Source of the DNA: Octopus bimaculoides
Taxonomy: Eukaryota
Direction of reading: 5' to 3'
Assembly: GCF_001194135.2 (NCBI RefSeq)
Contig: NC_068983.1
Coordinates: 88,268,679 to 88,332,678, forward strand
Length of the DNA: 64,000 nucleotides
Part shown: in pieces, positions 572 through 64,000 of the stretch
Position numbering within the stretch: position 1 is the stretch's first letter
How the letters are laid out: each line of letters starts with the position of its first letter
Notes under the pieces: generated by a model
What the model saw: only the letters and a program-made list of their open reading frames with translations
What the model was told of the DNA's origin: nothing
The model's database searches: none
Program-made: the position numbers and the translations under genes

Positions 572-779
572 TGTGTGAGAGAAATTGTGATGTAACAGGA
601 CAGAAATGTGTCTGCATGGATGATGGTGTCCTTGCTTTTAATGATTCTGAAAAGAAAGAGGCTTGGAGAAGCCATTATGAAAGGCTGCTGAATGTGGAGA
701 ATGAATGGGAGGAGGAGAGTTTGTCAAATGTTGATCCACTAGAGGGACCAGCTACCCAAATAGATAGCATCCTAGTAGA
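572..779 (+). mobile_element. Internal fragment of the RTE LINE family also seen at 52.9-57.7 kb (EN-RT linker)
   Basis: Translation CVCMDDGVLAFNDSEKKEAWRSHYERLLNVENEWEEESLSNVDPLEGPATQIDSILV is a paralogue of ORF 56227..56412(-). Confidence 0.85.
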
Positions 780-1249
780 GCTAAACAACAGCAGTATTCG
801 TCCTATTTTTTGAACTGCCATGTTGGCTTGGCAATAACTATTAACATCCAGTACTGCTGCCGTAGTCTCCTTTTGAGAGACTTAGAAATATTAATATTTC
901 TATTTTTGAAAACCAGTGAATGTATTCCACTTAATTTAGGTAAATAATCCTTCATACAGACGGGCAGTAGAGATGCCTGCTGGGTTCGGCTGCTCTACAT
1001 TGATAAGGGGCAACACCTTCAAACTGGTCTGTAGATGCCAGACCAGCATGGGGAAGTGACTGACCTCCACTGTTTGAAGGTTATAATGGACACAGGTTTA
1101 TGTGTCACATAGCTAGCTAGAGGTGATGGCCTCTTGGAGCTAATCAACGGCAGCATTCGTCCTATTTTTGGGACTGCCTTGTTGGCTTCGCGATAGCTAT
1201 TAATATCTAATACCACTGCTGTAGTCTCCTTTAGAGAGACTTAGAAATA

Positions 1250-1305
<56 letters not shown>

Positions 1306-1685: not shown

Positions 1686-4600
1686 TCACACAGCACAATC
1701 CCTCCATTGATGAGCCCGCAGATGACATTTAAGACCAGCTGCTGACTGACAGGGTTTAAAACACAAGTGGAAGATATTATTTAAGCTTCTTCTATATCTT
1801 TGCCCTTTGGAATCTGATTCTGAAGGAATGTTTTTGTGAACTAGCATATGTCTTTTAAATCCAGATATTGTCTTACAAGTTTTGTGACATATGACACAAG
1901 TTGTAAGAGGCGGTTGGTGTCCAAGATCATTATGTATCTGGGCATTTCGCTTTTCATGTGACTTGATATGGTTCACATATCCTGTTTTTGACAACAGAAC
2001 ATGATCACACATAATACATATCCAATGTTCACTGTTGATTTCAGTTCCATTCATTCCTTTGCGGAGTGCTGAATTATCTTTTCCTCTCAGGTGTTGCAAC
2101 CAATCCTAACAACACCTCTCCACATGTTCCGATCCAGAACATCAATTTCCCAATCACTTTTGTCCATATCTAGTTTCTTCAGGTTTTTCTTCACACAGTT
2201 TTTATACCTTATCCTTGGCTTATGTTGTGGTCACTTACCAGACTTGAGTTCACCATAAAAAAGATGCTTTGGCAATCGCTCATCTTTCATTCTAATAACA
2301 CATCCAGCCCATCTCATTTGAGTTAAGATAACGTTCAATTGAGCTACTATGTGCCATTTGCAAAACTTCTGTATCCAGTATGAAACATTCCCACTTGACT
2401 CCCAAAATACATCTGAGGCTCTTTTGATGAAATCTCTCCAGCATTTTCATATGACGCATATAAGTGGTCCATGTCTCACTCGAATAAAGAAGTGCCATCA
2501 ATACACACATTTTATAGATATTGATTTTCGCCAGCAGGAAAATACATCTATCTGCCCGTACTCGCTTTTCGAGCTTTCCAAATGCAACACTTCCCTCCCC
2601 TATTCAGTAGTTTATCTCTGCATCAAAGCCACCATCTCTTGACAGTATGCTTCCTAGGTAAATAAAAGTGTTAATGACTTCTAACCTTGTTCCATTCACA
2701 AAAATGTTTGGTTCAGAATGTGTTTGTCTTGGAGCAGGAGTAAATATTACTTTGCTTTTCCCAAGACTAATTGTGAGTCTAAAATGTACACATGCAGTGG
2801 AAAATCTGTCCATTAAATGTTGCATGCCTCCCTCTGAGTGTGCCATTAAATTAGCATCATCAGTGAAAAGTAATCCTTTTACAAGTGTTTTGAAAGTTTT
2901 TGCTTTGCAGTTAAACTGATTCAGATTAATAATGTGACCAGATGTCTGAAATCTGATTCTAATTCCCCTGTTGCAATCCTTGAAAGCTTACCAAAGCAAT
3001 GCAGCAAAATAAATAGAGAAAAGTGAAGGGGCAGGAATATCTCTCTGTTTGACACCATTGTCTACCAAAAATTCATGCGATAGCTCATTAAAGACTACCT
3101 GAGCTTTCATATTTCTGCATTGTTCCTTAAAGATGCTCACAAAATGTGTTGGGCAACCAAGTTTACACAAAACAATCCACAGTGCCTCCCTGTTTACCAT
3201 GTCAAATGCCTTAGTTAAAACTATGAAGACCTGGTAGAGTGGCATTTGTCCCTCTAAGCATTGTTCGTGAACCTGCCACACAGAAAATATCATGTGCATT
3301 GTTCCTTAGTCAGGTGTGAAACCACACTGTTCTTCGGGTATCACATATGGGCACATTCTCAACGAGACAATCTAACATGATCCTTGAAAGTATCTTTCCG
3401 GTATGTGCCAGGAGAGTTATCGCTCTAGAATTACCACACACTGCTTTTGTGCCCATACCCATGTATAAAGAGATTAGAATGCTATTTATCTATTCCTATG
3501 GTACATAAGATCCATTCCAAATTCGAGTTATCAGGCTGTGAATTTCAGATGAAATATGATCTCTACCTGTTTTCAGAATTTCAACTGGAATACCATCTAA
3601 TCCAAGAGCTTTACCTGATCTCAGTTTATATAATGCCAGATTTGCTTCTTCAATCGAAGGTGTATCATTCATGTGTTGTGCTATCTCTGTTTGTGGAATG
3701 TTGTTTATGATATACATGTTCACTACAGACAGATTGTAGAAAAGATCTGCAAAGTGTTCTCTCCATCTATTTATTATTCCCGGAAGATCTTTAATAACCT
3801 CATTTCCATCTTTTGACTTCAAGGGAACACATGATGAAGATTGGGATCCAAAAGCTTGCCATAATAAATTATAAAAACTTTTAATGTCTTCCCTAGCATA
3901 GGCCACCTGCACCTCCTCAGACAAATTTCTCCACCAAGTCTCTTTAAGCTTCCTGAGTTCCTTTTGCAAGTCTGCTTTCTGGGACTTGTACAACTTTTTT
4001 AGTTGCACTTTGTTCTTTACATTTGGGTCAAGAAGCTTTTCCTGAGTGGACCTCTTTGTTGCTAAAAGCTCATTTATTACCATATCATTTAAATTGAACC
4101 AATCTTGGTGCTGTCTCCTCTTAAAATTAACACCTCTGATCCCATTTTATATATTCCATCCTGAAAAGATTCCCATGAACCATCAAAATGAACATTGCTG
4201 CATCTCTTCTGAAATAACTACAAAACTTGTGGTTGTTTTAACTGCTCAACATCAATTCCTTTTGGTACTCATACACCTGCACCACAAATCTTCTTGTGGA
4301 CCCTGAACTTAAACTTAGCCCTCACCATTTTGTGATCGGTATCACAATCAGCACCTCACAATATCCTGAGACAGCACAAATTTTGTAAGTCAACTTTCTG
4401 AGTTAATACAAAGTCAATCAGTGACTTTGCTTTGATCTTGAGTGAATCCTGGTAACATTATACTTCGACTTATGACAAAAGAAAGTATTCCCAACAACTA
4501 TCTCTAGCTAAGAGTACATTTGTAGCAGATTCAACCCATTGTTGTTCATCTTTCCTATTCCATAATGCCCAAGTACATTTCAAGCATCATAGTCTCTACC

Positions 4601-5110: not shown

Positions 5111-6235
5111 CTACCATTTTAGAATGCTGGCATTTCACACAGTGTGCCAAAGCGGTGATCATTTAGCGCATATTAGGCCAGAAAAACCAAACCATAATAA
5201 GCTTCACTGAGGCAGTGATGCCAGGATGTGACAGTGAATGCAGGGCATCGAAAACAGAACACTGGTGGGTCACAGGTACAAATGGTCTGGGAGAACCAGT
5301 AGCTGTGTCACAAAGGATTGTGCCTTCAGCAGATGGAAGTGAAAGATAGGAAAACTTGCAACAGGACAGCTTGGTGGAAGTTAGATCCAATGTGTCCAGA
5401 GCTGGCTGATCCTGAGCAATGGCAGTTAAATAAATTTCAGCAGGAGATGAAAGAGAACCCACAGGGAGACAAGACAGCACATCAGCAGGTACGTTCTCGA
5501 TTCCAGGTACATGCCGAATGTCACTCGTGAACTGGGAAATGTAGTCCAAGTGATGAAAAGCACGAGGCGATTGTCTGTCTGACATAGATGACAGAGTAAA
5601 TGTAAGAGGCTTGTGATCAGTATAAATCACAAAATTCTGGCATTTGAGTTGATGTTGAAAGTGACAAATTGACAGGTAGACCGCTAATAGTTCATGATCA
5701 AACGTACTGTAACAATGTTCAGGTGGATTTAATTAACGAGAAAAAAATGCCAAAGGTCGAGCTTGATTATTGATGGTATGTTGTAAAACAGCACCAACCG
5801 CAGAATCCAATGCATCAACTGTTAAAGAGAGATGAGCATCAGGAATTGGATGTACAAGCAAAGGAACAGAAGCTATTTCCTTCTTGATTGACTCAAAGAA
5901 AGATAATGCCTCGGCAGATAAAGTGATAGGAGAATTTTGGAGGAGAGAAGTCAGATACCATTAGAGTCAATATAATGACCTAGGAATTCCAGTATCGATG
6001 TGGCCAGTATCGATTGGACATTCAGCAGTAGACAAGAGAAAAACAATTTCTTAAGCACAGGTTTGTCCTCAAGTGGAGTGTCACTGAATTCTCGCAAACA
6101 GCAAAGAAACTCAGATGGTGTCCTATCTCCCAGATGTTCATCCTGCATCAGTGTCTGGAATTTACTCTCCGTAGATTGTGTGTTCCGACGGAGGGCCTCG
6201 TATTTGATCTTCTATCAAAATGTTAAATATCGTAA
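5111..6235 (-). mobile_element. Gypsy/Ty3 LTR retrotransposon internal deletion derivative (gag remnant fused to RT end, RNase H, integrase Zn finger)
   Basis: QDEHLGDRTPSEFL...NVQSILAT (gag) joined to LEFLGHYIDSNGI (RT end); VGAVLQH...RPLAFF, YSTFDHELLAVYL, IYTDHKPL, HLDYISQFTSDIRHVPG (RNase H); HSLSHPGI...FFWPNM...CVKCQ (HHCC). Confidence 0.9.
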
Positions 6236-9119: not shown

Positions 9120-10985
9120 AATAAAGTAATCTATTATTATATCCATAGGCGGATATTTTTAGTATGAAGTGGTAAAGAGTGTGATGTGCTGAAAAAAGAG
9201 AGAACAATACTTGAAGTGTAGTTTCATTCCAGTGGTAAATATCCGTGTAGAAATTCGTGCAAAGTAATCCTTGTGTGAATAATCCGGAAATTTATGTTGG
9301 AACGAGAGTTGATATAGCATAGATAGCAGAGGTATATATATTCCATATTGCGATAGAATTTTGCTTGTTTACTTGAAGAATGTCCAAGTCAAGTGAAAAG
9401 TTAGCGGTAATTAGGTCAAGTCAAGAAGATAGAATGTGAAAGGGGATAGAGGGGATATAGAGGCGGAGAAAGATAATGATATATTTATGGTCAGTTGGTC
9501 TTAACAGGGTAGAGGGGTTGAGCATATAGAGAGAAGGAGGAATAGGGGGATGAGGTTAAAAGGTCTAGTGAGTAGGAAGGAATGCGTGTGTGTAGTATAT
9601 AGGTGGTGGGGGTATGGGTGATAAACCAAGGACAGAGATAAAGGAGAGGGATGGGTGGGAAAGGTAGTTAGTAGTATCATATTTTAGGATGCTGCCAAGC
9701 CTATTTATAGACGGTGGAAAGATATTGAAAGAGGTGACGTAGTCTGTTTGTGTAGGTGGTGTTCTTGTGAAATTGAGAATATGAGAAATAGATTTGTTGG
9801 TACATGTGTGGTGAGATGATCGAAAGGAAATAACCCTATTCAAAAGGATGGTGAAAGATGGATGTTTTTGCCAGGTTGAATAGGTTGCCTGTGGGGGGTT
9901 GTGTTATTATGTTGCGTGATCATTTGTGCAATTTTGCTTGTGTTAGAACCTGAATGTGTGGAAAGACCGGTGGTTGCAGTTGCTAAACGCTTCATTATAT
10001 CGATTAAGTAGAGTGGGAGAATTGTATTTTAAAATATGGAACGCCTCCGTTAAGCATAGCTTGCAATTGGAGCGCTGACCCTGGTATGGAGTTCCAGAGT
10101 CTAATATGGACCATTTAAAGGTGTATTGGGTATTTTTGTTTTTGAGGTGATGAATATGATTAGCTAATGTTGTAGATTTACTGTGTTTGTCGTATCTAAA
10201 AGAGTGCATGTGGGCTGCGTAGCGATGTTTAAAGTTTATAGTTGCACCAATGTACGTGGCAGTAGAGTTATGTAATAGATTTTTGACGGTGCATTTATAT
10301 ATTACATTGTATCTTGCGCAATGTGTTTGAAGCAGACAGATAGTCCCGGAGCGACAGTTACAAGTGTAGGAGGCTAGAGGGTTGCGTATGCTTGTGGTTG
10401 AGTTATTATTATTGGAGGATATGTTATTAGGGGCTGTGTAGGAAACTAGATTAGTGGAATTATTGTTATGGCTATTAGTCCTATCAGTGTTATTATTGGT
10501 ATTGCTATTATCTAGAATATTAATGGGTTGGGATCCATTGTGGTTTTGTTCCAGTGTACGAGCGTTAGTGTTAGAAGAACGTATATTGATGTCCGTGTTG
10601 GGTGTATGTGTGGGTCGGGTGCTGGTGTTAGCATAGCTACGGTTGCTTAGGTTTTGGTAATAGAGCGAGAGTTTATGTTTGTTAGAAGCTGCTATAATAG
10701 ATTCAAAGTTAGGCTGTGGTACACCTCCCATTCTCTCTTAACACTAGGAACCTAGCCAAATCTTTCTTTAAAATACTAGATTCTAACTTCCCACGACAAC
10801 ACAAATACCACTCTATATTCTACAGATCCACTTTAAAATTATCGTATTCTACCACTCCTAACTTTGAATCTATTATAGCAGCTTCTAACAAACATAAACT
10901 CTCGCTCTATTACCAAAACCTAAGCAACCGTAGCTATGCTAACACCAGCACCCGACCCACACATACACCCAACACGGACATATAA
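9120..10985 (-). mobile_element. Penelope-like element: GIY-YIG endonuclease ORF and 3' region, with an inverted 5' segment
   Basis: ORF 9943..10731(-): CNCR...VIYKCTV...TYIGAT...FKHRYAAHMHSF...LANHIHHLK...WSIL...CKLCLTEAFHIL...LLNRYNEAFSNCNH. ORF 10716..10985(+): PFSLNTRNLAKSFFKILDSNFP...KLSYSTTPN, the RT-to-EN linker of Penelope. Confidence 0.92.
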
Positions 10986-12563: not shown

Positions 12564-13289
12564 GTATGTTTCTCATAAACTAGAAAAGGATGACAATGTT
12601 AACATATAGCTTCTCTTGGACTTGTGGCTAGTCTCTATCTACCCTTTCCAACTAATTGAGTATTTACAACAACCATTGTTTCTTTTCCCTCAACAACAGA
12701 AAGTATCTACTCCTATCTCCCCTTTTTCTTCCCTCTCTCTTCTTTTCTTTACTCCTGACAACCTTATACGATTCCCACTCCCAAATATTTGACCCCATCT
12801 TTTCCTTTTCTTACTTCTTGACTGTTTTATTTCATCAAACATTTGTTTTTCTATTGTGTTCTGGTTTCACCATTCATTTTAACTCACATGTAACATGAGT
12901 AAACTTAGAAATTCCAAGCAATAATGTAACCTTCATGTAATTAAGGTATTCCCAGCCTCAGGATTTGCTAAGTTGAGCTATCTTCTGCTCTTGGATTGAA
13001 AAAGTATAGCCTTCAAGTTATGACATGATGTAGTGGCCACAAGTAGCTATAAAATATCTCATGAACAAATGGGAAAGCGATGCCTTTAAAACCCAAGGTG
13101 CAATCAGAAATGTTAATTATGTCACTTTTCTGTGAAAGACATAGCACATGTAATTTAGCAGCTTCCCAAAACTGTCATCAAGGTAGCACTTCCCAATGTG
13201 ATATGACATTTTTGGTTAAAACAATATACAATACCATGTGATATAAAAACTGCCCTGTCATAAATATAGAGACTCCTCCTTTTATTGAA

Positions 13290-13515
13290 TCTGTTATCTT
13301 TTATTTGTTTCAGTCATTAAACTACAGCCATGCTGGGGCACCACCTTGAAGAATATTTTTAATCAAATGTATTGACCCCAGTACTCATTTTTTTTAAAGC
13401 CTGTAACTTATTCTATTGATCTTTTTTGCTGAACAACTAAGTTACAGGAACACAAACAGACCAGCACTGGTTATCAAGCAGTAGGGTTGGGGCTGGACAA
13501 ACACACACACACACA
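13290..13515 (-). mobile_element. SINE family B, 3' module
   Basis: ttacttgtttcagtcatt...catgctggggcaccacc...cttttttgctgaacaactaagtta; matches 26700-26900. Confidence 0.75.
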
Positions 13516-26551: not shown

Positions 26552-27106
26552 AGTACTTATTCTATTGGTCTCTTTTGCTGAACTGCTAAGTTATGGGTAT
26601 ATTAACACAAACATCAGTTGTCAAGCAATGCTGGCGGGGACAAACATAGACACAGACACACATAAATATGTGTGTGTGTGTGTGTGTGTATACTCTTACT
26701 CTTTACTCTTTTACTCTTTTACTTGTTTCAGTCATTTGACTGCGGCCATGCTGGAGCACCGCCTTTAGTCGAGCAAATCGACCCCAAGACTTATTCTTTG
26801 GAAGCCTAGTACTTATTCTATCGATCTTGTTTGCCGAACCACTAAGTTACGGGGACGTAAACACACCAGCATCGGTTGTCAAGCGATGTTGGGGGGACAA
26901 ACACACAAACACATACACACAGACATATATATATATATATATATACGACGGGCTTCTTTCAGTTTCCGTCTACCAAATCCACTCACAAGGCTTTGGTCGG
27001 CCCGAGGCTATAGTAGAAGACACTTGCCCAAGATGCCACGCAGTGGGACTGAACTCGGGACCATGTGGTTGGTAAGCAAGCTACTTACCACACAGCCACT
27101 CCTACG

Positions 27107-34734: not shown

Positions 34735-34945
34735 TGTATATGTATGTATGTGTCTGTGTTTGTCCCCCAACAACCGATGCTGGTGTGTTTACGTCCAGCC
34801 ATAACTTAGCGGTTTGGCAAAAGAGACCGATAGAATAAGTACTAGGCTTTCAAAGAATAAGTCCTGGGGTCAATTTCTTGGACTAAAGGTGGTGCTCCAG
34901 CATGGCTGCAGTCAAATGACTGAAACAAGTAAAAGAGTAAAACAC
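34735..34945 (+). mobile_element. SINE family B, 3' module
   Basis: gtgtttgtcccccaacaaccgatgctggtgtgtttacg...gactgaaacaagtaaaagagtaaa. Confidence 0.85.
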
Positions 34946-40454: not shown

Positions 40455-40810
40455 TTGTATATTTTATCTTTTACTTGTTTCAGTCATTAGACTGTGGCCT
40501 TAAAGCATTTTTGTCGAATGTATTGGACCCCAGTACTTATTCTTTGTTAAGCTGGGTATTTATTCTTTCAGATCTCTTTTGCCACTAAGTTATGGGGACG
40601 TAAGCACACCAACACCAGTTGTCAAGTTGTAGTGGGGGACAGACACAAAGACATACACACACACATAAATATTTGGGCTTCTTTCAGTTTCCACCTACCA
40701 AATCAACTATCGCCCAAGGCTACAGCAGAAGACACTTGCCCAAGGTGCCATACAGTGGGACTGAACTCAAAACCACCTGATTAGGAAGCAAGCTTCTTAC
40801 CACACAGCCA
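40455..40810 (-). mobile_element. SINE family B
   Basis: ttacttgtttcagtcattag...gccactaagttatggggacg...gacacttgcccaaggtgcca...aagcttcttaccacacagcc. Confidence 0.82.
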
Positions 40811-52898: not shown

Positions 52899-55800
52899 AA
52901 TCATCGCCATCATCGATTAACGTCTTTTCCATGCTGGCATGGGTTAGACTGAGGTCTGGAGAGCCAGTGGCTGCACCAGGCTCCAATCTGATGTGGCAAA
53001 GTTTCTACAGCTGGATGCCCTTCCTAATGCCAACCACTCTGAGAGGGTAATGGGTGCTTTTTACGTTCCACCAGCACAGGAGGCAGGCCTGGCAATGATC
53101 ACATTTGGATGGTGCTTTTTATTTGCCACTGGCACAGGAGCCAGTCAGGTGGACCTGGCATCGACTATGTTCAGATGGTGCCTTTTATGTGCCACCAGCA
53201 AGGGAGTCAGTCATGGGGCACCAGCCCCAGCTATGATATTAGTTTTACTTAACTCAACAGGTCTTCTCAAGCATATCATATCACCTGACGCATCAGGGGT
53301 ATTCTTAACAGAGCTGGACGTGCGTGGCTGCGATCTCACTTTAGTTGCCGGGTCTTCTCAATCACAACATATCTCCAAAGGTCCCGGTCCCCTGTCATTG
53401 CCTCTGTGAGACCCAATGTTCGAAAGTCATGCTTCACCACCTTGTCCCATGTCTTCCTGGGTCTACCTCTCCCACAGGTTCCTTCTACAGTTAGGGAGTG
53501 GCATTTCCTTACATAGCTGTCTTCATTCATACATGGTCATGTGTCTTCAACACATGACCATGCCAGCACAGTCGCCTCTCTTGCACACTGCATTTGATGC
53601 TTCTTATGCTCGACTTTTCTCTCAGGGCGCTTATACTCTATCGTGTATACGCACTGACATTATACATCCAGCGGATCATACTAGCTTCATTTCTTTCAAG
53701 CCTACACATGTCCTCAGCATTCATGACCCATGTTTCACTGCTGAGTAGAATGGCAGTTTGCACACATGCATCATACAGTCTACCTTTCACCCTGAGCAAG
53801 AGACCCTTAGTTGCCAGCTCCCTGAACTTTGCCTAGGCTATTCTTACTCTAGTTTCTACACTCTCAGAGCAACTGTCCTCACTACAGACTTGGTTGCCTA
53901 GGTAGCAGAAGCTATTAACTACTTCTAGTTTCTCCTGACATGTGATGGAATCTGTTTTCTGTACATCTTCAGTGTTTATTGCCCCAGTGCATCTGCCATA
54001 CACAAAAACTATTTTCCCAGTTAACCTTCCTTTGATATTGCCGCACATTTTATGTGTCCATAAATTACACCGGGTACATCGTATAGAGTTTCTACCCATG
54101 CCTTTTCTACAGATCGAGCAGGGCCATCTACCTGAAGGGGGTTGTGATTTGACAGCCTTCTTACTTACTGAGACTTTGGTTTTGGCTAGGTTAACCCTAA
54201 GGCCCTTTAATTCTAGACCTTGCTTCCACACCCTAAACTTTGTCTCTAGTTCTGGCAGTGACACAGCTATTAGTACAAGATCAACAGCATAGAGGAGCTC
54301 CCAGGGGCAGCCTCTCATGAATTCTTCTGTTATTGCCTGGAGGACTATAATGAATAAGAGTGGGATGAGGACTGATCCTTGGTGAACCCCTACTTCCACT
54401 CAGAATGCTTCACTATACTCATTGCCAAACCCCACCTTACTGACAGCATTCCTGTACAGGGCTTGTACAGCTCTTACCAGCCACTCATCTATCCCCAGTT
54501 TCCACATTGACCACCAGATAAGGGACCAGAGGACCCTGTCAAAGGCTTTCTCCAAGTCAGCAAAAGCCCAGTACAGAGGTTTATCTTTGACTAGGTATTT
54601 CTCCTGCAGTTGCCTTACCAGAAATATAGCATCAGTAATGCTTCTGCCTGGCACAAAACCAAACTGCATCTCATCTAGGCTAACTCTCTCCCTAATTAGT
54701 TGGGCTATGACCCTCTCGATAACTTTCATCACCTGATCCAATAATTTAATACCCCTGTAGTTATTTCTATCTAAAGCACCTTTCCCCTTGTAGCAGCTGA
54801 CTGTGGTGCTGCTACACCAGTCATTGGGTATGACTCCATGAACTACCTGATTTACGATGCGGGTGACAAGACTATAACCCACACCACCTGATATTTTAAG
54901 TATCTCAGCAGTGATTCCTGATGGGCCAGGTGCTTTCCCTGTCTTCATATCCTTAATTGCTTTATCTACCTGGGAGCATTATCATTTTTGTTTTATTATT
55001 TGCCTTCTTTAATATGTGTGTACATATAAACACTGAAAATGTGCAGAGAACAGCTTCTGTCGCATTCCAGGGAGAAAAATTACAAGTAGTTGATGGCTTC
55101 TGTTACCTGGGGGATCAGATCAGTAGCAGGGGTGGATGTTCTGAATAAGCTGCTAGAATAAGAATAAGAATAGCCTGGGCAAGGTGCAGAGAGCTCCTAT
55201 CTCTGCTGGTGACAGGGGACCTCTCACTCAGTGAAAGGTAGACTGTATGATGCATATGTGCAAACAGCCATGCTACATGGCAGTGAAATGTGGGCCGTGA
55301 CTGCTGAGGACGTGTGGGCTTGCAAGGAATTAAGCCAGTATGCTCCGCTGGATGTGTGATGTCAGTGTGCATACATGACTGAGTGTGGGCACCCTGAGAG
55401 AAGGGTTGGATTTAAGAAGCATCAGATGTGGTGTGCAAGAAAGATGACTGCACTGGTATGGACATATGTTGTGAATGAATGAGGACAGCTGTGTGAAAAA
55501 GTGTCACACTCTGGCAGTTGAGGGAACCTGTGGAAGAAGTAGACCCAGGAAGGCCTGGGATGAGTTGGTGAGGCACAACCTTCGAATGTTGGGCTTTACC
55601 AAGGCAATGACTAGTGACTGAGATCTTTGGAAGTATGCTGTGCTTGAGAAGACCGAACAAGCCAAGTGAGACCATAACCCATGGCCTATGCCACTGGGTG
55701 TATCCAGCCCACTTATGAGTACCCTTCATCCATATGAAAAAAAAAATTTGCTTGCAAAGACCAGTTGAGGCAAGTAAAATCAAAATCAAAATTGCTGACG

Positions 55801-57680
55801 TGGCCGATAACAGTACCACTTGATTGGCACTTGTCCTGGTGGAACGTTAAAAGCTCATCCGAGTGTGATCGTTGTCATGGCCGCTGATTGATTTCCGTGC
55901 CAATGGCACATGAAAAACAACATTCAAGCATGGTCATTGCCAGTGCCGCTTGACTGGCTCCCATGCAGGTGGCACGTAAAAACACTTTTTGAGCATGGTC
56001 GTTGCCAGAACTGAATGACTAGCCCTCATGCCAGTGGCACGTAAAAGCACCCACTACACTCTCAGAGTGGTTGGCATTAGGAAGGATATCCAGCTGTAGA
56101 AATTTTGCCAGATCAGATTGGAGCCCGGTGCAGCCTTCTGGCTCACCAGTCCTCAGTCAAACTGTCCAACCCATGCCAGCATGGAAAGCAGACGTTAAGC
56201 AACGACGATGATGATGTACTGTTGATTCAGATAGCTGGTCCCTCAATTGGGTTAACCTTTGGCAGACTCTCATCCTCCCATTCATTCTCTACATTCAGCA
56301 GTCTTTCATAATGGCATCCCCAAGCCTTTTTCTTTGCAGAATCATTAAACGCAAGGGCACCATCATCCATGTGGACACATTTCTCTCCTATGACATTATG
56401 GTTTTCTCTCAATCACTGTCTTGCAATCTGAAACACTTCAGTTCTCTGGTCCTCACATTGTTAAACATTGGCAAACTTCTTTTCTGCTACTCCCTTGGCT
56501 ATATATACCTGTCACTTAGCTTCCCTTTTGGCTATCTGATACATTCTCCAGCTACCACCACTCTTCCAGGCATTCCTAGTCTGTTTCTCTGCTCTAATGG
56601 CCCTGTCTACAGTATTGTTTCACCACCATGTTACCCTAGGTCTGGAAGGGTCTTTGCACCAGCCACAGATTTGGTCTGTGGCACTCAGCAAGCTGTCTCG
56701 CAGGAATTTCCATCTGCCTTCTATGTCACAAGACTGTAGCTCCTCCTCCCTATCATCAAGTTTCTTGGTAAGGATATCCCTAAATCTGTGACCTTCTGGC
56801 CTCGAGTCTAAAGTCACTAATAACTATTCTATGTTGGTGGGGTACATTCTTCACCAGGGAGGGTCTTTGTATTTAAGAGCAACCATGCATTCGCTGTCTG
56901 GTGAGAATGAAATCGATTTGGCTAGCAGAGTCACCTGATTGATAGGTTATCAGGTGGTTAGCTGGCTTCCTGAAGTTAGTGTTGCAGATCAATAGGTTAT
57001 TTGCTTCGCAGAACACCAGGAGCCTAGTTCCCTCTTTATTTCTGGTACCAACTCCATGCCCCCCTATTACACCATGTAAGATACTAGATTGCTGTCCGAC
57101 ATACCCATTAAAATCTCCAGCCACAAAGATGAGATCATTATCACTCCTATTTGAGGTAGCCTGCAGAAGAATATCATAAAAGTGATCCTTCTGTTCATTT
57201 AGTACACCTGCTTGTGGGGCGTAGGCAGAGATTATTGTAGCTATACCATTCTGCAAGACTAGCCTGAGTTTAAGTACTCTATCGCACACCCTCACACCTC
57301 TATGACCTTATCCACCCATTTCTCTGGAAGATGTATGCCCACACCCCCATTCCATCACTATTGCCTTCCCAGAAGAGCTTATACCTATGTGCTTTGCCTG
57401 TGAAAACTCTGGATGAAGCTCCTCTCTATCTTACCTCTTGTATGCAACATATATTAACACACCTCCATTCAAGCACCCCTACAATCTCGCTAGACCTACC
57501 TTTCAATGTGTCTACATTTAGAGTGCCATCTCTGTAAACTAGGAAAAAGATATGGGAGGTAACACAGGAAGGATAGATGTTATTCAGTACCTGAAAAGAA
57601 GGTTCCCATGAATGTTTGGTAACAAGCGTCTTAATAGTTGTCCTTGCTGTTAACCTACCGTCATTCAAACATGTTAGAGT
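52899..57680 (-). mobile_element. Near full-length decayed RTE-clade LINE (host copy), split by a nested insertion at 54975-56215
   Basis: EN: GTLNVDTLKGRSSEIVGVLE...CCIQEVR, ISAYAPQAG, AGDFNG, SQIDFILTR. RT: MKTGKAPGPSG, NYRGIKLL, QFGFVPGR, DLEKAFDRV, VGVHQGSVL.PLLF, LLYAVDL, FCYLG. Tail: GRGRPRKTW, then ...catcgccatcatcg. Confidence 0.95.
54975..56215 (+). mobile_element. 5'-truncated RTE copy of the same family inserted antisense into the host copy
   Basis: INTENVQRTAS..FQGEKLQVVDGFCYLGDQISSRGGCSE through tandem UTR repeats to ...gacgttaagcaacgacgatgatgat; about 50 bp of unrelated filler at the 5' junction. Confidence 0.92.
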
Positions 57681-62814: not shown

Positions 62815-63039
62815 GGACTAAAAGCAATTAATATTCATGGAAACAGAGGGACTGTAGTAATACTGATTACATGATCATCTTGATCATTATCATCATCATC
62901 ACCAGTTATCATACATCTTCCATGTTGGCATGGCTTTGAAAGCATCCAGCAAACCACATGGGTGCGTTGTACTCCAATGTCAGCTTTGGCATGACTTCTA
63001 CAGTTGGAAGCCATTCATAATATCAACCATTTAAGAGAT

Positions 63040-63202
63040 GCAGGCATGGCCATGTGGTAAGAAGCTTGCTTCTCAGCCACATGGTCCTGGATTCAGTTCT
63101 ACTACATGGCATCTAGAGCAAGTATCTTCTACTATAACCCTGGACTGACCAAAGCCTTCTGAGTGGATTTGGTAGATGAAAGAAGCTCATCGTATATATG
63201 TG

Positions 63203-63280
<78 letters not shown>

Positions 63281-63490
63281 GTGTGTCCCCCACCACTGTT
63301 TGACAACTCGTGTTGGTCTGTTTATGTCCCTGTAACTTAGCAGTTCAGCAAAAGAGACCAATAGAATAAGTAACAGGCTTCAAAATAAAATTTGAGTACT
63401 GGGGTTGATATATTTGACTAAAAGTTCTTCAAGGCAGTGCCCCAAGATGTCCGTAGTCTAATGACTGAAACAAGTAAAAGGTAAAAGATG
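63040..63490 (+). mobile_element. Full-length SINE family B
   Basis: Head (gtggtaagaagcttgct...ggattcagtt), (TA)n, 3' module ending gactgaaacaagtaaaag. Confidence 0.85.
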
Positions 63491-63558
63491 TACTCGGTGC
63501 TTTTTACATAACCAGCAGCATTAGAGAGGTTACCTAGTAACTGACAAAACAGGAAAAA

Positions 63559-63976
63559 AAAACAAGCAATGTTAATTCTCTAAATGCAGTTACTGTTAAT
63601 ACTTCATTTAGAGAATTAACATTGCTTGTTTTCACTTTTTCGATATCAGTGAAGAATTTCACTGGAAAAATATACATATGGTTGCCAAGAATTTGTACCT
63701 CTCATCAAAGGTCGGTAGCTATCGGACGCTGACGAAGGGAAATAACCCTGAAACCCGGGTCCGTTCGTGCTACGATCAAGATGAGAGGGGTAACTTCCCT
63801 TGGCAAAACAAACAGGACACAGTAGTGTGTCGATAAGCCAGCTGGAGGAGATGTCCTCCTGGGGCTAAAGCAACAGTAACATCCACCCCTAGGGGTCAGC
63901 CACACTTAAGTGGCAATACACTTCACTTTATCGTGCAGTTATTGTTAATACTTCATTTAGAGAATTAACATTGCTT
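63559..63976 (+). mobile_element. Retrozyme-like / non-autonomous Penelope-type element: 349-bp monomer, 43-bp terminal direct repeat, inverted 5' end
   Basis: Direct repeats 63585-63627 and 63934-63976 (1 mismatch); inverted repeat 63559-63586 versus 63605-63632; followed by (TA)n; contains the hammerhead; no credible ORF. Confidence 0.72.
63715..63773 (+). ncRNA. Type I hammerhead ribozyme (predicted cleavage after C63761, GUC)
   Basis: Stem I cggacg (63723-28)/cgttcg (63762-67) extended by gtagc/gctac across an internal loop; core CUGACGA 63729-35; stem II aggg-aaataa-ccct; GAAA 63750-53; palindromic stem III a-cccggg-u; H17=C. Confidence 0.88.
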
Positions 63977-64000
63977 ATATATATATATATATATATATAT

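What the first reader, a model, noticed from the sequence alone, without database searches (positions are those of the whole stretch)
63682..63806. Intact type I hammerhead ribozyme in a long rod-like hairpin
Seen: every catalytic-core position is present (C3UGAC7GA9 at 63729-63735, G12AAA at 63750-63753, U16.1 at 63760, C17 at 63761). Stem II is 4 bp with a 6-nt loop and stem III is the 6-nt palindrome CCCGGG. Stem I (cggacg/cguucg, one G-U) continues through an internal loop (gtagc/gctac) and on through cctctcatc/gatgagagg (63698-63706/63780-63788) and ttgccaag/cttggcaa (63682-89/63799-806). Established: short palindromic stem III is typical of hammerheads in Penelope-like elements and metazoan non-LTR retrozymes (newt Sat2, schistosome SM-alpha type), which can cleave as dimers; a stem I internal loop contacting loop II is the usual tertiary interaction of fast type I hammerheads. 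Inference: a functional self-cleaving RNA family in this genome. CpGs are retained, so the copy is young or unmethylated. I cannot check whether it has been reported in cephalopods.
Basis: partly seen in the sequence, partly recalled or inferred. Interest (0 to 1): 0.92.

Follow-up and report, generated by a model that had tools for sequence, protein, structure and literature searches.

The report
Hammerhead ribozyme in a small retroelement
The sequence is a real, sequence-intact self-cleaving hammerhead RNA motif carried by a young copy of a ~349-bp non-coding mobile element of a type already known in many animals (non-LTR retrozymes, which depend on Penelope-like elements), so it is a sound but fairly ordinary find.

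Summary
At 63723-63767 (+) there is a canonical metazoan type I hammerhead: helix I 6 bp, CUGACGA, helix II 4 bp with a 6-nt loop, GAAA, helix III A-CCCGGG-U, and C17. It sits inside a 125-nt rod (z -4.8). Rfam finds nothing, probably because its filters reject the motif. A covariance model built only from three experimentally cleaving retrozyme hammerheads (coral, mussel, axolotl), run without filters, scores it 24.9 bits (E 2.8e-5 for the window).

The motif is not isolated. It lies in a 349-bp unit present as 1.12 copies (43-nt direct repeats, 98% identical). An inverted copy of the unit's 3' end precedes it, and it ends directly in (TA)n. The same model found a second, homologous element at 771-1256: a 359-bp unit, 1.35 copies, ending in (TA)n at the same unit position. 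Its hammerhead is decayed at C3, G8 and G12, but all stems still pair, with four compensatory changes in helix I.

This matches non-LTR retrozymes and Penelope-like-element (PLE) derivatives. Self-cleavage, circular RNA and copy number could not be tested, and no cephalopod genome was searchable. Verdict: new member of a known kind, moderate-to-low interest.

The parts
63553..63590 (-). Inverted copy of the element's 3' end. It forms a 32-bp palindrome with 63601-63632.
   Evidence: I21: arms 63559-63590 / 63601-63632, 97% complementary, 10 nt apart; minus-strand self-match
63585..63627 (+). 5' direct repeat (pseudo-LTR-like). It equals the last 43 nt of the unit.
   Evidence: D3: 43 nt, 98% identical to 63934-63976, spacing 349
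63585..63933 (+). One full 349-bp unit of element A. It is non-coding, GC 0.44, and the predicted circular form is highly self-paired.
   Evidence: circular fold -110.7 kcal/mol, z -5.2; no Pfam domain in its ORFs; no protein homologue
63682..63806 (+). Rod-like hairpin that embeds the hammerhead; 8 CpGs, CpG o/e 1.01.
   Evidence: (MFE -52.1, z -4.82)
63723..63767 (+). Type I hammerhead: helix I 6 bp, core CUGACGA/GAAA/UC, helix II 4 bp plus a 6-nt loop, helix III A-CCCGGG-U.
   Evidence: the model match spans 63719-63772: 24.9 bits, E 2.8e-5, no non-standard pair
63761..63762 (+). Predicted self-cleavage site, between C17 (63761) and C1.1 (63762).
   Evidence: Position follows from the hammerhead numbering applied; cleavage itself was not tested.
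63934..63976 (+). 3' direct repeat: the start of a second unit, cut off at the element's 3' end.
   Evidence: D3
63976..64000 (.). (TA)n tract directly abutting the element's 3' end; it runs to the end of the window.
771..1256 (+). Element B: an older homologue of element A. It has 1.35 copies of a 359-bp unit, with direct repeats 771-897 / 1130-1256 that are 84-87% identical.
   Evidence: local alignment z 10.4; nhmmer A vs B E 1.1e-9
990..1040 (+). Decayed hammerhead of element B: UUGAUAA (C3>U, G8>A) and CAAA (G12>C). All three helices still pair.
   Evidence: (18.9 bits, E 0.002 for the window)
1254..1301 (.). (TA)n tract abutting the 3' end of element B.

Best explanation
Element A (63553-63976) is a recent, slightly-more-than-one-unit genomic insertion of a ~349-nt non-coding retroelement of the metazoan non-LTR retrozyme kind. 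These are non-autonomous elements thought to be mobilised by the reverse transcriptase and GIY-YIG endonuclease of Penelope-like elements (PLEs).

Shown here:
- An intact canonical type I hammerhead embedded in a stable rod.
- A 349-bp unit with terminal direct repeats.
- An inverted 3'-end fragment upstream.
- A 3' junction in (TA)n.
- A second, diverged and decayed family member with the same layout.

Inferred from published work on such elements:
- In transcripts that carry two or more units, the hammerheads cut after C17 (63761). Because helix III is the short palindrome ACCCGGGU, they may act partly as intermolecular or tandem dimers.
- Cleavage releases unit-length RNAs with 5'-OH and 2',3'-cyclic phosphate ends.
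- A tRNA-ligase-type enzyme (RtcB) circularises these into highly self-paired rods, in which the non-catalytic pairing dominates and protects the circle.
- A PLE enzyme reverse-transcribes multimeric or circular RNA from a preferred 3' site by target-primed synthesis at nicked (TA)n. This gives insertions with a fixed 3' end, a variable 5' end, more than one unit (hence the terminal repeats) and occasional inverted fragments.

At this particular locus there is only one hammerhead. A read-through transcript would be cut once, and no circle would form unless more units lie beyond the end of the window.
For: Hammerhead identity:
- A covariance model was built only from the coral Amil224, mussel Mg353 and axolotl Ax353 retrozyme hammerheads (sequences from Supplementary Table 2 of PMC7229834).
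- Run without filters, it matches 63719-63772 over its full length at 24.9 bits, E 2.8e-5.
- The best score in 47.8 kb of unrelated invertebrate DNA was 13.3 bits.
- The architecture equals the published definition of canonical metazoan type I hammerheads: helix I 6 bp, helix II 4 bp, helix III 1-2 bp plus a small palindromic loop (PMC4209133).
- The mussel retrozyme hammerhead has the analogous 6-nt palindrome, GAAACGCGCGUC, and cleaves at about 0.1 per min.

Element context:
- 43-nt direct repeats, 98% identical, 349 bp apart.
- Unit size and GC (0.44) lie within the retrozyme range of 170-400 bp and <45-50% GC.
- The circular fold has z -5.2.
- No coding capacity.

Family:
- Element B is homologous over about 290 nt (nhmmer E 1e-9; z 10.4).
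- In the A/B hammerhead alignment, 26 of 26 cells pair. Four of six helix I pairs changed on both sides, whereas slid controls pair 23-48% of cells.

Insertion signature:
- Both elements end within about 3 nt of the same unit position.
- Both ends abut one of only 15 (TA)>=8 tracts in the window.
- Their 5' ends differ: 177 versus 259 nt upstream of the cleavage site.
- Partial tandems, upstream inverted truncated copies and a (TA)n preference are described for PLEs (PMC8557442).
- Retrozymes have been proposed to be PLE derivatives (10.64898/2026.07.22.740005).

Age:
- CpG o/e is 1.01 in rod A against 0.23 in rod B and 0.27 in the window.
Against: - No Rfam hammerhead hit at any threshold. 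I had no positive control showing that the tool can detect hammerheads.
- Only one hammerhead per locus is visible, so the defining tandem arrangement of retrozymes is not seen here.
- 10.1-11.1 is A-U instead of the highly conserved G-C, which may slow catalysis.
- The catalytic fold is 7.6 kcal/mol less stable than the rod's MFE fold.
- No autonomous PLE was identified in the window.
- No other genomic copy, transcript or cleavage datum could be obtained: the searchable collections hold no cephalopod DNA.
- The covariation rests on two sequences aligned by the model itself.
Confidence: 0.75

Rival explanations
1. The locus is the 5'-truncated tail (pseudo-LTR region) of an autonomous Penelope-like element, not a dedicated non-autonomous retrozyme. 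The hammerhead is the PLE's own ribozyme.
For: - Its insertion architecture matches that described for PLEs: partial tandem, inverted 3' fragment and a (TA)n junction.
- Hammerheads are located in PLE pseudo-LTRs.
- Retrozymes and pLTRs are sequence-related in Xenopus, so the distinction is partly one of naming.
Against: [quoted passage not shown] This one is canonical (6 bp / 4 bp, no bulge).
- Two independent insertions (A and B) both consist only of the ~350-bp unit repeated more than once. That fits a short unit as the template rather than a 3-4 kb element.
- No RT or GIY-YIG domain was found in ORFs of the 6 kb upstream.
Confidence: 0.15
2. A host-exapted ribozyme: a single-copy hammerhead kept for processing of a host transcript, as proposed for some intronic or 3'-UTR hammerheads of vertebrates.
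For: The core is intact and CpGs are retained in a CpG-depleted genome.
Against: - It sits inside a mobile-element copy with terminal repeats.
- The homologous copy B has been left to decay.
- No gene model or conserved coding sequence is nearby.
- Youth alone explains the retained CpGs.
Confidence: 0.03
3. A chance match: a GC-rich hairpin that happens to contain the hammerhead consensus.
For: - The core string alone is not rare: 4 matches against 1.7 expected.
- Rfam reports nothing.
- At about 5e-4 strict matches per 64 kb, a genome of a few gigabases would hold some tens of chance hits.
Against: - The independent model gives E 2.8e-5.
- A second homologous element carries the same three-helix layout, with compensatory changes, at the same place in its unit.
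- Helix lengths and the palindromic helix III equal the published canonical architecture.
Confidence: 0.02

Closest known systems
Non-LTR retrozymes of metazoans, especially the Mytilus galloprovincialis retrozyme (Mg353; Cervera & de la Pena 2020, PMC7229834)
   Same: - Unit size: 349 bp here, 350-390 bp in the mussel.
- Low GC, no coding capacity, and a highly self-paired predicted circle.
- A canonical type I hammerhead with a 6-bp helix I, a 4-bp helix II and a 6-nt palindromic helix III (CCCGGG here, CGCGCG in the mussel).
- Host phylum: if the window is octopus, as its one protein homologue suggests, both are Mollusca.
   Different: - No detectable sequence homology outside the ribozyme (A vs Mg353 z 2.8, B vs Mg353 z 0.6).
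- Only 1.12 and 1.35 units per locus here, not arrays.
- 10.1-11.1 is A-U here and G-C in the mussel.
- Expression and circles are unknown here.
Penelope-like elements (Neptune, Penelope/Poseidon and Naiad clades; Craig et al. 2021, PMC8557442) and their hammerheads (Cervera & de la Pena 2014, PMC4209133)
   Same: - Partial-tandem insertions that create terminal direct repeats.
- An inverted truncated copy next to the upstream repeat.
- Insertion at (TA)n microsatellites.
- A type I hammerhead with a small palindromic helix III.
   Different: - No RT/GIY-YIG ORF.
- The unit is ~350 bp instead of 3-4 kb.
- The hammerhead is canonical, not the 'minimal' PLE variant.
Newt satellite 2 and axolotl retrozyme hammerheads (Amex1/Amex2) and the Schistosoma Sm-alpha hammerhead
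   Same: - Type I topology.
- A short palindromic helix III that allows an active dimer.
- ~330-350-bp repeat units.
- From my own memory of the Sm-alpha sequence (not tested here): it also has a 6-bp helix I followed by a UAC bulge (UAU here) and a loop 2 containing AAAUA (AAAUAA here).
   Different: - Those occur in very large tandem arrays.
- Here helix III has one more potential pair (A-U plus C-G, capped by CCGG).
- No array is visible in the window.

Membership tests
Hammerhead ribozyme, canonical metazoan type I | Conserved core CUGANGA ... GAAA ... U16.1-H17 in the right order. | tested here: met
   CTGACGA 63729-35, GAAA 63750-53, T 63760, C 63761
Hammerhead ribozyme, canonical metazoan type I | Helix I about 6 bp (the open helix), helix II about 4 bp, helix III 1-2 bp capped by a 2-4-nt palindromic loop (PMC4209133). 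| tested here: met
   Helix I 6 bp, helix II 4 bp. Helix III is A-U plus C-G capped by CCGG (or the palindrome CCCGGG).
Hammerhead ribozyme, canonical metazoan type I | G10.1-C11.1 base pair at the base of helix II. | tested here: not met
   A63736-T63749 (A-U). Copy B has G-U. The experimentally active axolotl Ax353 has U-U at this position, so this pair is not an absolute requirement.
Hammerhead ribozyme, canonical metazoan type I | Significant score against a family covariance model. | tested here: inconclusive
   - Rfam RF00163: no hit at the gathering threshold or at E<=10. No positive control was available for the tool.
- Model R1, built from three validated retrozyme hammerheads: 24.9 bits, E 2.8e-5 with filters off; nothing with default filters.
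Hammerhead ribozyme, canonical metazoan type I | Loop 1 / loop 2 tertiary contact. | not testable with these tools
   An internal loop UAU/U lies 6 bp from the core and loop 2 is 6 nt (AAAUAA). The contact itself needs structure probing or kinetics.
Hammerhead ribozyme, canonical metazoan type I | Mg2+-dependent self-cleavage 3' of position 17. | not testable with these tools
   Needs in vitro transcription.
Non-LTR retrozyme | Tandem repeats of 150-450 bp, each unit with a type I hammerhead (two or more ribozymes per locus). | tested here: not met
   Only 1.12 units (A) and 1.35 units (B), with one hammerhead each. Element A ends in the (TA)n tract that runs to the window's end, so more units beyond it cannot be excluded. 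Monomer derivatives of retrozymes are described.
Non-LTR retrozyme | Low GC, non-coding, no LTR/PBS/PPT, and a highly self-paired unit RNA. | tested here: met
   GC 0.44; circular fold z -5.2; no Pfam domain or protein homologue.
Non-LTR retrozyme | Expressed as unit-length linear and circular RNAs. | not testable with these tools
   No transcriptome of the source organism was accessible.
Penelope-like element (autonomous) | ORF with a telomerase-like RT plus a GIY-YIG endonuclease between pseudo-LTRs. | tested here: not met
   No RT or GIY-YIG domain in ORFs of 57.4-63.9 kb. Downstream lies outside the window.
Penelope-like element (autonomous) | Insertion architecture: partial tandem, inverted truncated copy, microsatellite target. 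| tested here: met
   searches compared with the description in PMC8557442

The most novel reading that the evidence does not exclude
The most novel reading not excluded is that octopus genomes harbour a currently active, possibly abundant retrozyme family. Standard Rfam/Infernal annotation would miss it because the HMM filters discard these hammerheads. Its unit-length circular RNAs could be abundant in tissues, as they are in mussels. Its insertions have a fixed 3' end, variable 5' ends, more than one unit and (TA)n junctions. These could give unusually clean genomic evidence for how PLE enzymes copy circular or multimeric ribozyme RNAs.
Probability: 0.3. Interest if true: 0.45.

Novelty: new member of a known kind. 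Interest (0 to 1): 0.3.

Why it matters
- It adds what is probably a cephalopod lineage to the animals carrying hammerhead-bearing non-LTR retrozymes. The octopus origin rests on a single protein homologue.
- Routine Rfam scans can miss such ribozymes entirely, so published counts may be underestimates. One example is the 235 Hammerhead_1 hits in the giant squid.
- The two insertions in one 64-kb window share a 3' end and a (TA)n junction. This is direct, if small-scale, support for the proposal that retrozymes are mobilised by Penelope-like-element machinery.
- None of this changes current understanding. It is an incremental annotation result.

Tried and rejected
1. Rfam cmscan found no hammerhead on the whole window (gathering threshold), on 301 nt or on 67 nt (E<=10). 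A would-be positive control on four metagenome loci with hammerhead-like strings also gave nothing. I therefore treat the Rfam negative as uninformative rather than as evidence against.
2. The metagenome scan for CTGANGA-N12-16-GAAACCCGGGTC gave 94 hits. By my estimate that is about the number expected by chance. None had helix I/II pairing related to this motif. The one tandem hit (L012) is a protein-coding repeat.
3. Stricter pattern scans of the bacterial/archaeal genome collection and of the viral contigs gave 0 hits.
4. I tried to reach other copies through spurious ORFs of the element. Five exact look-ups and one homology search with the 66-aa ORF found nothing.
5. I tried to sample the source genome through its LINE reverse transcriptase. 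Hits were 55-72% identical. The three fetched ENA contigs share only 65-72% DNA identity in short LINE-related stretches and no SINE, so they come from other species. I used them only as a negative control.
6. Ten window ORFs are not in the protein collection, so the contig could not be extended past position 64000. The single homologue of ORF 9943-10731 (an Octopus bimaculoides protein) has no contig on record.
7. RNAalifold on a MAFFT alignment of the two rods was unusable because the alignment slips after helix III. I replaced it with the model-guided alignment.
8. The fourth published hammerhead (axolotl Ax330) was left out of the model because MAFFT misaligned its GAAA.
9. I considered that the (TA)n tract upstream of element A (63207-63276) might be the other half of the target. 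I rejected this because that tract is internal to a SINE-like repeat that ends near 63490.

Full report
**1. The observation**

- Helix I: cggacg 63723-28 pairs with cgttcg 63762-67 (6 bp, one G-U).
- Core: CTGACGA occupies 63729-35.
- Helix II: aggg/ccct (63736-39/63746-49) closes the loop aaataa.
- GAAA occupies 63750-53, followed by cccggg (63754-59), T16.1 (63760) and C17 (63761).
- Distal pairings: gtagc/gctac, cctctcatc/gatgagagg and ttgccaag/cttggcaa extend helix I into a 125-nt rod.

Three details refine the description.
- The internal loop of helix I is UAU opposite a single U.
- The 10.1-11.1 pair is A-U rather than the G-C that is highly conserved in canonical hammerheads (PMC4209133).
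- The minimum-free-energy fold of the rod (-52.1 kcal/mol, z -4.82) is a non-catalytic alternative in which CGGAC pairs with GUCCG. Enforcing the catalytic fold costs 7.6 kcal/mol. A stable rod competing with the ribozyme fold is common in viroid-like and retrozyme RNAs (my own knowledge).

**2. Is it more than chance?**

- The bare core string is not rare: 4 matches against 1.7 expected.
- A descriptor that also demands the three helices finds only this site on both strands.
- In 2000 simulated windows that descriptor gave 33 relaxed matches and 1 strict match.
- Rfam gave no hammerhead hit at all, even on a 67-nt slice at E<=10.
- To get an independent test, I took the sequences of retrozyme constructs that self-cleave in vitro from Supplementary Table 2 of PMC7229834 (coral Amil224, mussel Mg353, axolotl Ax353). 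I aligned their hammerheads and built covariance model R1 with the textbook structure. The query sequence was not used.
- With default filters R1 finds nothing in the window.
- With filters off it matches 63719-63772 over the full model, with every pair standard, at 24.9 bits and E 2.8e-5 for the whole window.
- In 47.8 kb of unrelated invertebrate DNA the best score was 13.3 bits, E 0.08.
- The Rfam negative is therefore most likely a filter effect, although I had no positive control for Rfam.

**3. What surrounds it**

The hammerhead is part of a mobile-element copy, which I call element A.
- A 43-nt direct repeat (63585-63627 and 63934-63976, 98% identical) defines a 349-bp unit present as 1.12 copies.
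- Immediately upstream, 63553-63590 is an inverted copy of the unit's 3' end. It forms a 32-bp palindrome with 63601-63632.
- The second repeat ends directly in a (TA)n tract that runs to the end of the window.
- Upstream, a SINE-like repeat ends near 63490.
- The unit has GC 0.44, no ORF with a Pfam domain or any protein homologue, and a predicted circular fold of -110.7 kcal/mol (z -5.2).

**4. A second family member**

R1 gave one other significant match, at 990-1040 (+): 18.9 bits, E 0.002. I call the element that carries it element B.
- It lies between 127-nt direct repeats (771-897 and 1130-1256, 84-87% identical) that are 359 bp apart. This is 1.35 units. The second repeat also ends directly in (TA)n.
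- Elements A and B are homologous over about 290 nt (nhmmer E 1.1e-9; local alignment z 10.4 with 0 of 300 shuffles reaching it).
- B's hammerhead sits at the same place in the unit, but its core is broken: UUGAUAA (C3>U, G8>A) and CAAA (G12>C).
- B's three helices still pair. In the model-guided A/B alignment, 26 of 26 cells are standard pairs, and four of six helix I pairs differ on both sides. When the 3' partners are slid, only 23-48% of cells pair.
- This comparison has only two sequences and the alignment leans towards the structure, so it is supportive rather than decisive.
- CpG o/e is 1.01 in rod A, 0.23 in rod B and 0.27 in the window. Together with repeat identities of 98% versus 84-87%, this says A is young and B is old and decaying neutrally.

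**5. Insertion signature**

- In the A/B alignment the two insertions end within about 3 nt of the same unit position.
- Each end abuts one of only 15 (TA)>=8 tracts in 61 kb. The chance of this for both elements is roughly 1e-6 (my estimate).
- Their 5' ends differ: 177 and 259 nt upstream of the cleavage site.
- A fixed 3' end, a variable 5' end, more than one unit and an inverted 3' fragment together form the pattern described for Penelope-like elements. Those show partial tandems forming pseudo-LTRs, an inverted 5'-truncated copy next to the upstream repeat, and (TA)n as a preferred target (PMC8557442).
- No RT or GIY-YIG ORF lies in the 6 kb upstream, and both insertions consist of the short unit only.

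**6. Mechanism**

Shown: the anatomy described above.

Inferred from published systems:
- Transcripts with two or more units are cut by the hammerheads after C17.
- The short palindromic helix III lets two ribozymes form an 8-bp intermolecular helix (ACCCGGGU duplex, -14.9 kcal/mol), as in newt and axolotl repeats.
- The mussel hammerhead has the analogous CGCGCG and cleaves as a single motif at about 0.1 per min. Monomer activity is therefore plausible, if slowed by the A-U pair at 10.1-11.1.
- Unit-length RNAs are circularised by RtcB-type ligase and adopt the rod.
- PLE enzymes copy multimeric or circular RNA by target-primed reverse transcription at (TA)n.
- This locus has only one ribozyme, so it would yield one cut and no circle.

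**7. Comparison with what is known, and novelty**

- The architecture equals the published 'canonical metazoan type I hammerhead'. The element equals a monomeric derivative of a non-LTR retrozyme.
- Hammerhead_1 hits have already been reported in a cephalopod genome: 235 in the giant squid (PMC6962438).
- I found no paper describing retrozymes or this family in octopus.
- The window's only named protein relative is an Octopus bimaculoides protein, which is consistent with an octopus origin.
- This is a new member of a known kind.
- The points of modest interest are the filter blind spot of standard annotation and the clean PLE-type insertion signature.

**8. Limits**

- No cephalopod DNA or RNA could be searched with the tools available.
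- Copy number, tandem arrays, the autonomous partner, expression and catalysis therefore remain untested.

Noticed in passing
window 771-1301: A second hammerhead-bearing element (B). It has a 359-bp unit in 1.35 copies, a decayed core, and ends in (TA)n. It is homologous to the element in the finding.
   Followed up: yes
window 9943-10731 (-): An intact 262-aa ORF with an N-terminal low-complexity region. Its C-terminal part looks to me, from memory, like a GIY-YIG-type nuclease motif (..VIYKCTV..YIGAT..), possibly a remnant of a Penelope-like (Naiad-type) element. Pfam finds nothing. Its only homologue is XP_014775464.1 of Octopus bimaculoides, 57% identical over 54% of the query.
   Followed up: partly
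window 53833-57295 (-): A decayed LINE. RVT_1 is split over two ORFs (53833-54399, 54400-54948), and an Exo_endo_phos_2 endonuclease ORF lies at 56873-57295. The closest proteins in the database are only 55-72% identical.
   Followed up: partly
window 2988-4083 (-) and 5163-5630 (-): Further retroelement fragments: an RVT_1 piece and an Integrase_H2C2 piece (LTR-retrotransposon type).
   Followed up: no
window about 62900-63490; also 13289-13380, 26707-26765, 34886-34942, 40459-40493: A SINE-like repeat family with an internal (TA)n microsatellite and a common 3' end ...GACTGAAACAAGTAAAAG.... The hammerhead element lies about 60 nt downstream of one copy.
   Followed up: partly
whole window: Draft-quality eukaryotic sequence: 9 runs of N (2922 bases), GC 0.366, CpG o/e 0.27-0.28, and many (TA)n, (CT)n and (CA)n tracts.
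   Followed up: no
window 63719-63772 and 990-1040: A methodological point. Infernal's default HMM filters discard both hammerheads. This probably explains why Rfam cmscan reports nothing.
   Followed up: yes
protein P0001: The best database match to the window's LINE reverse transcriptase (72% identity) is labelled 'RNA-directed DNA polymerase, partial [Escherichia coli]' and sits on a 586-bp contig. It is probably animal DNA contaminating a bacterial assembly.
   Followed up: no
window 55927-56050: A 65-nt tandem repeat, 1.9 copies, 79% matches.
   Followed up: no
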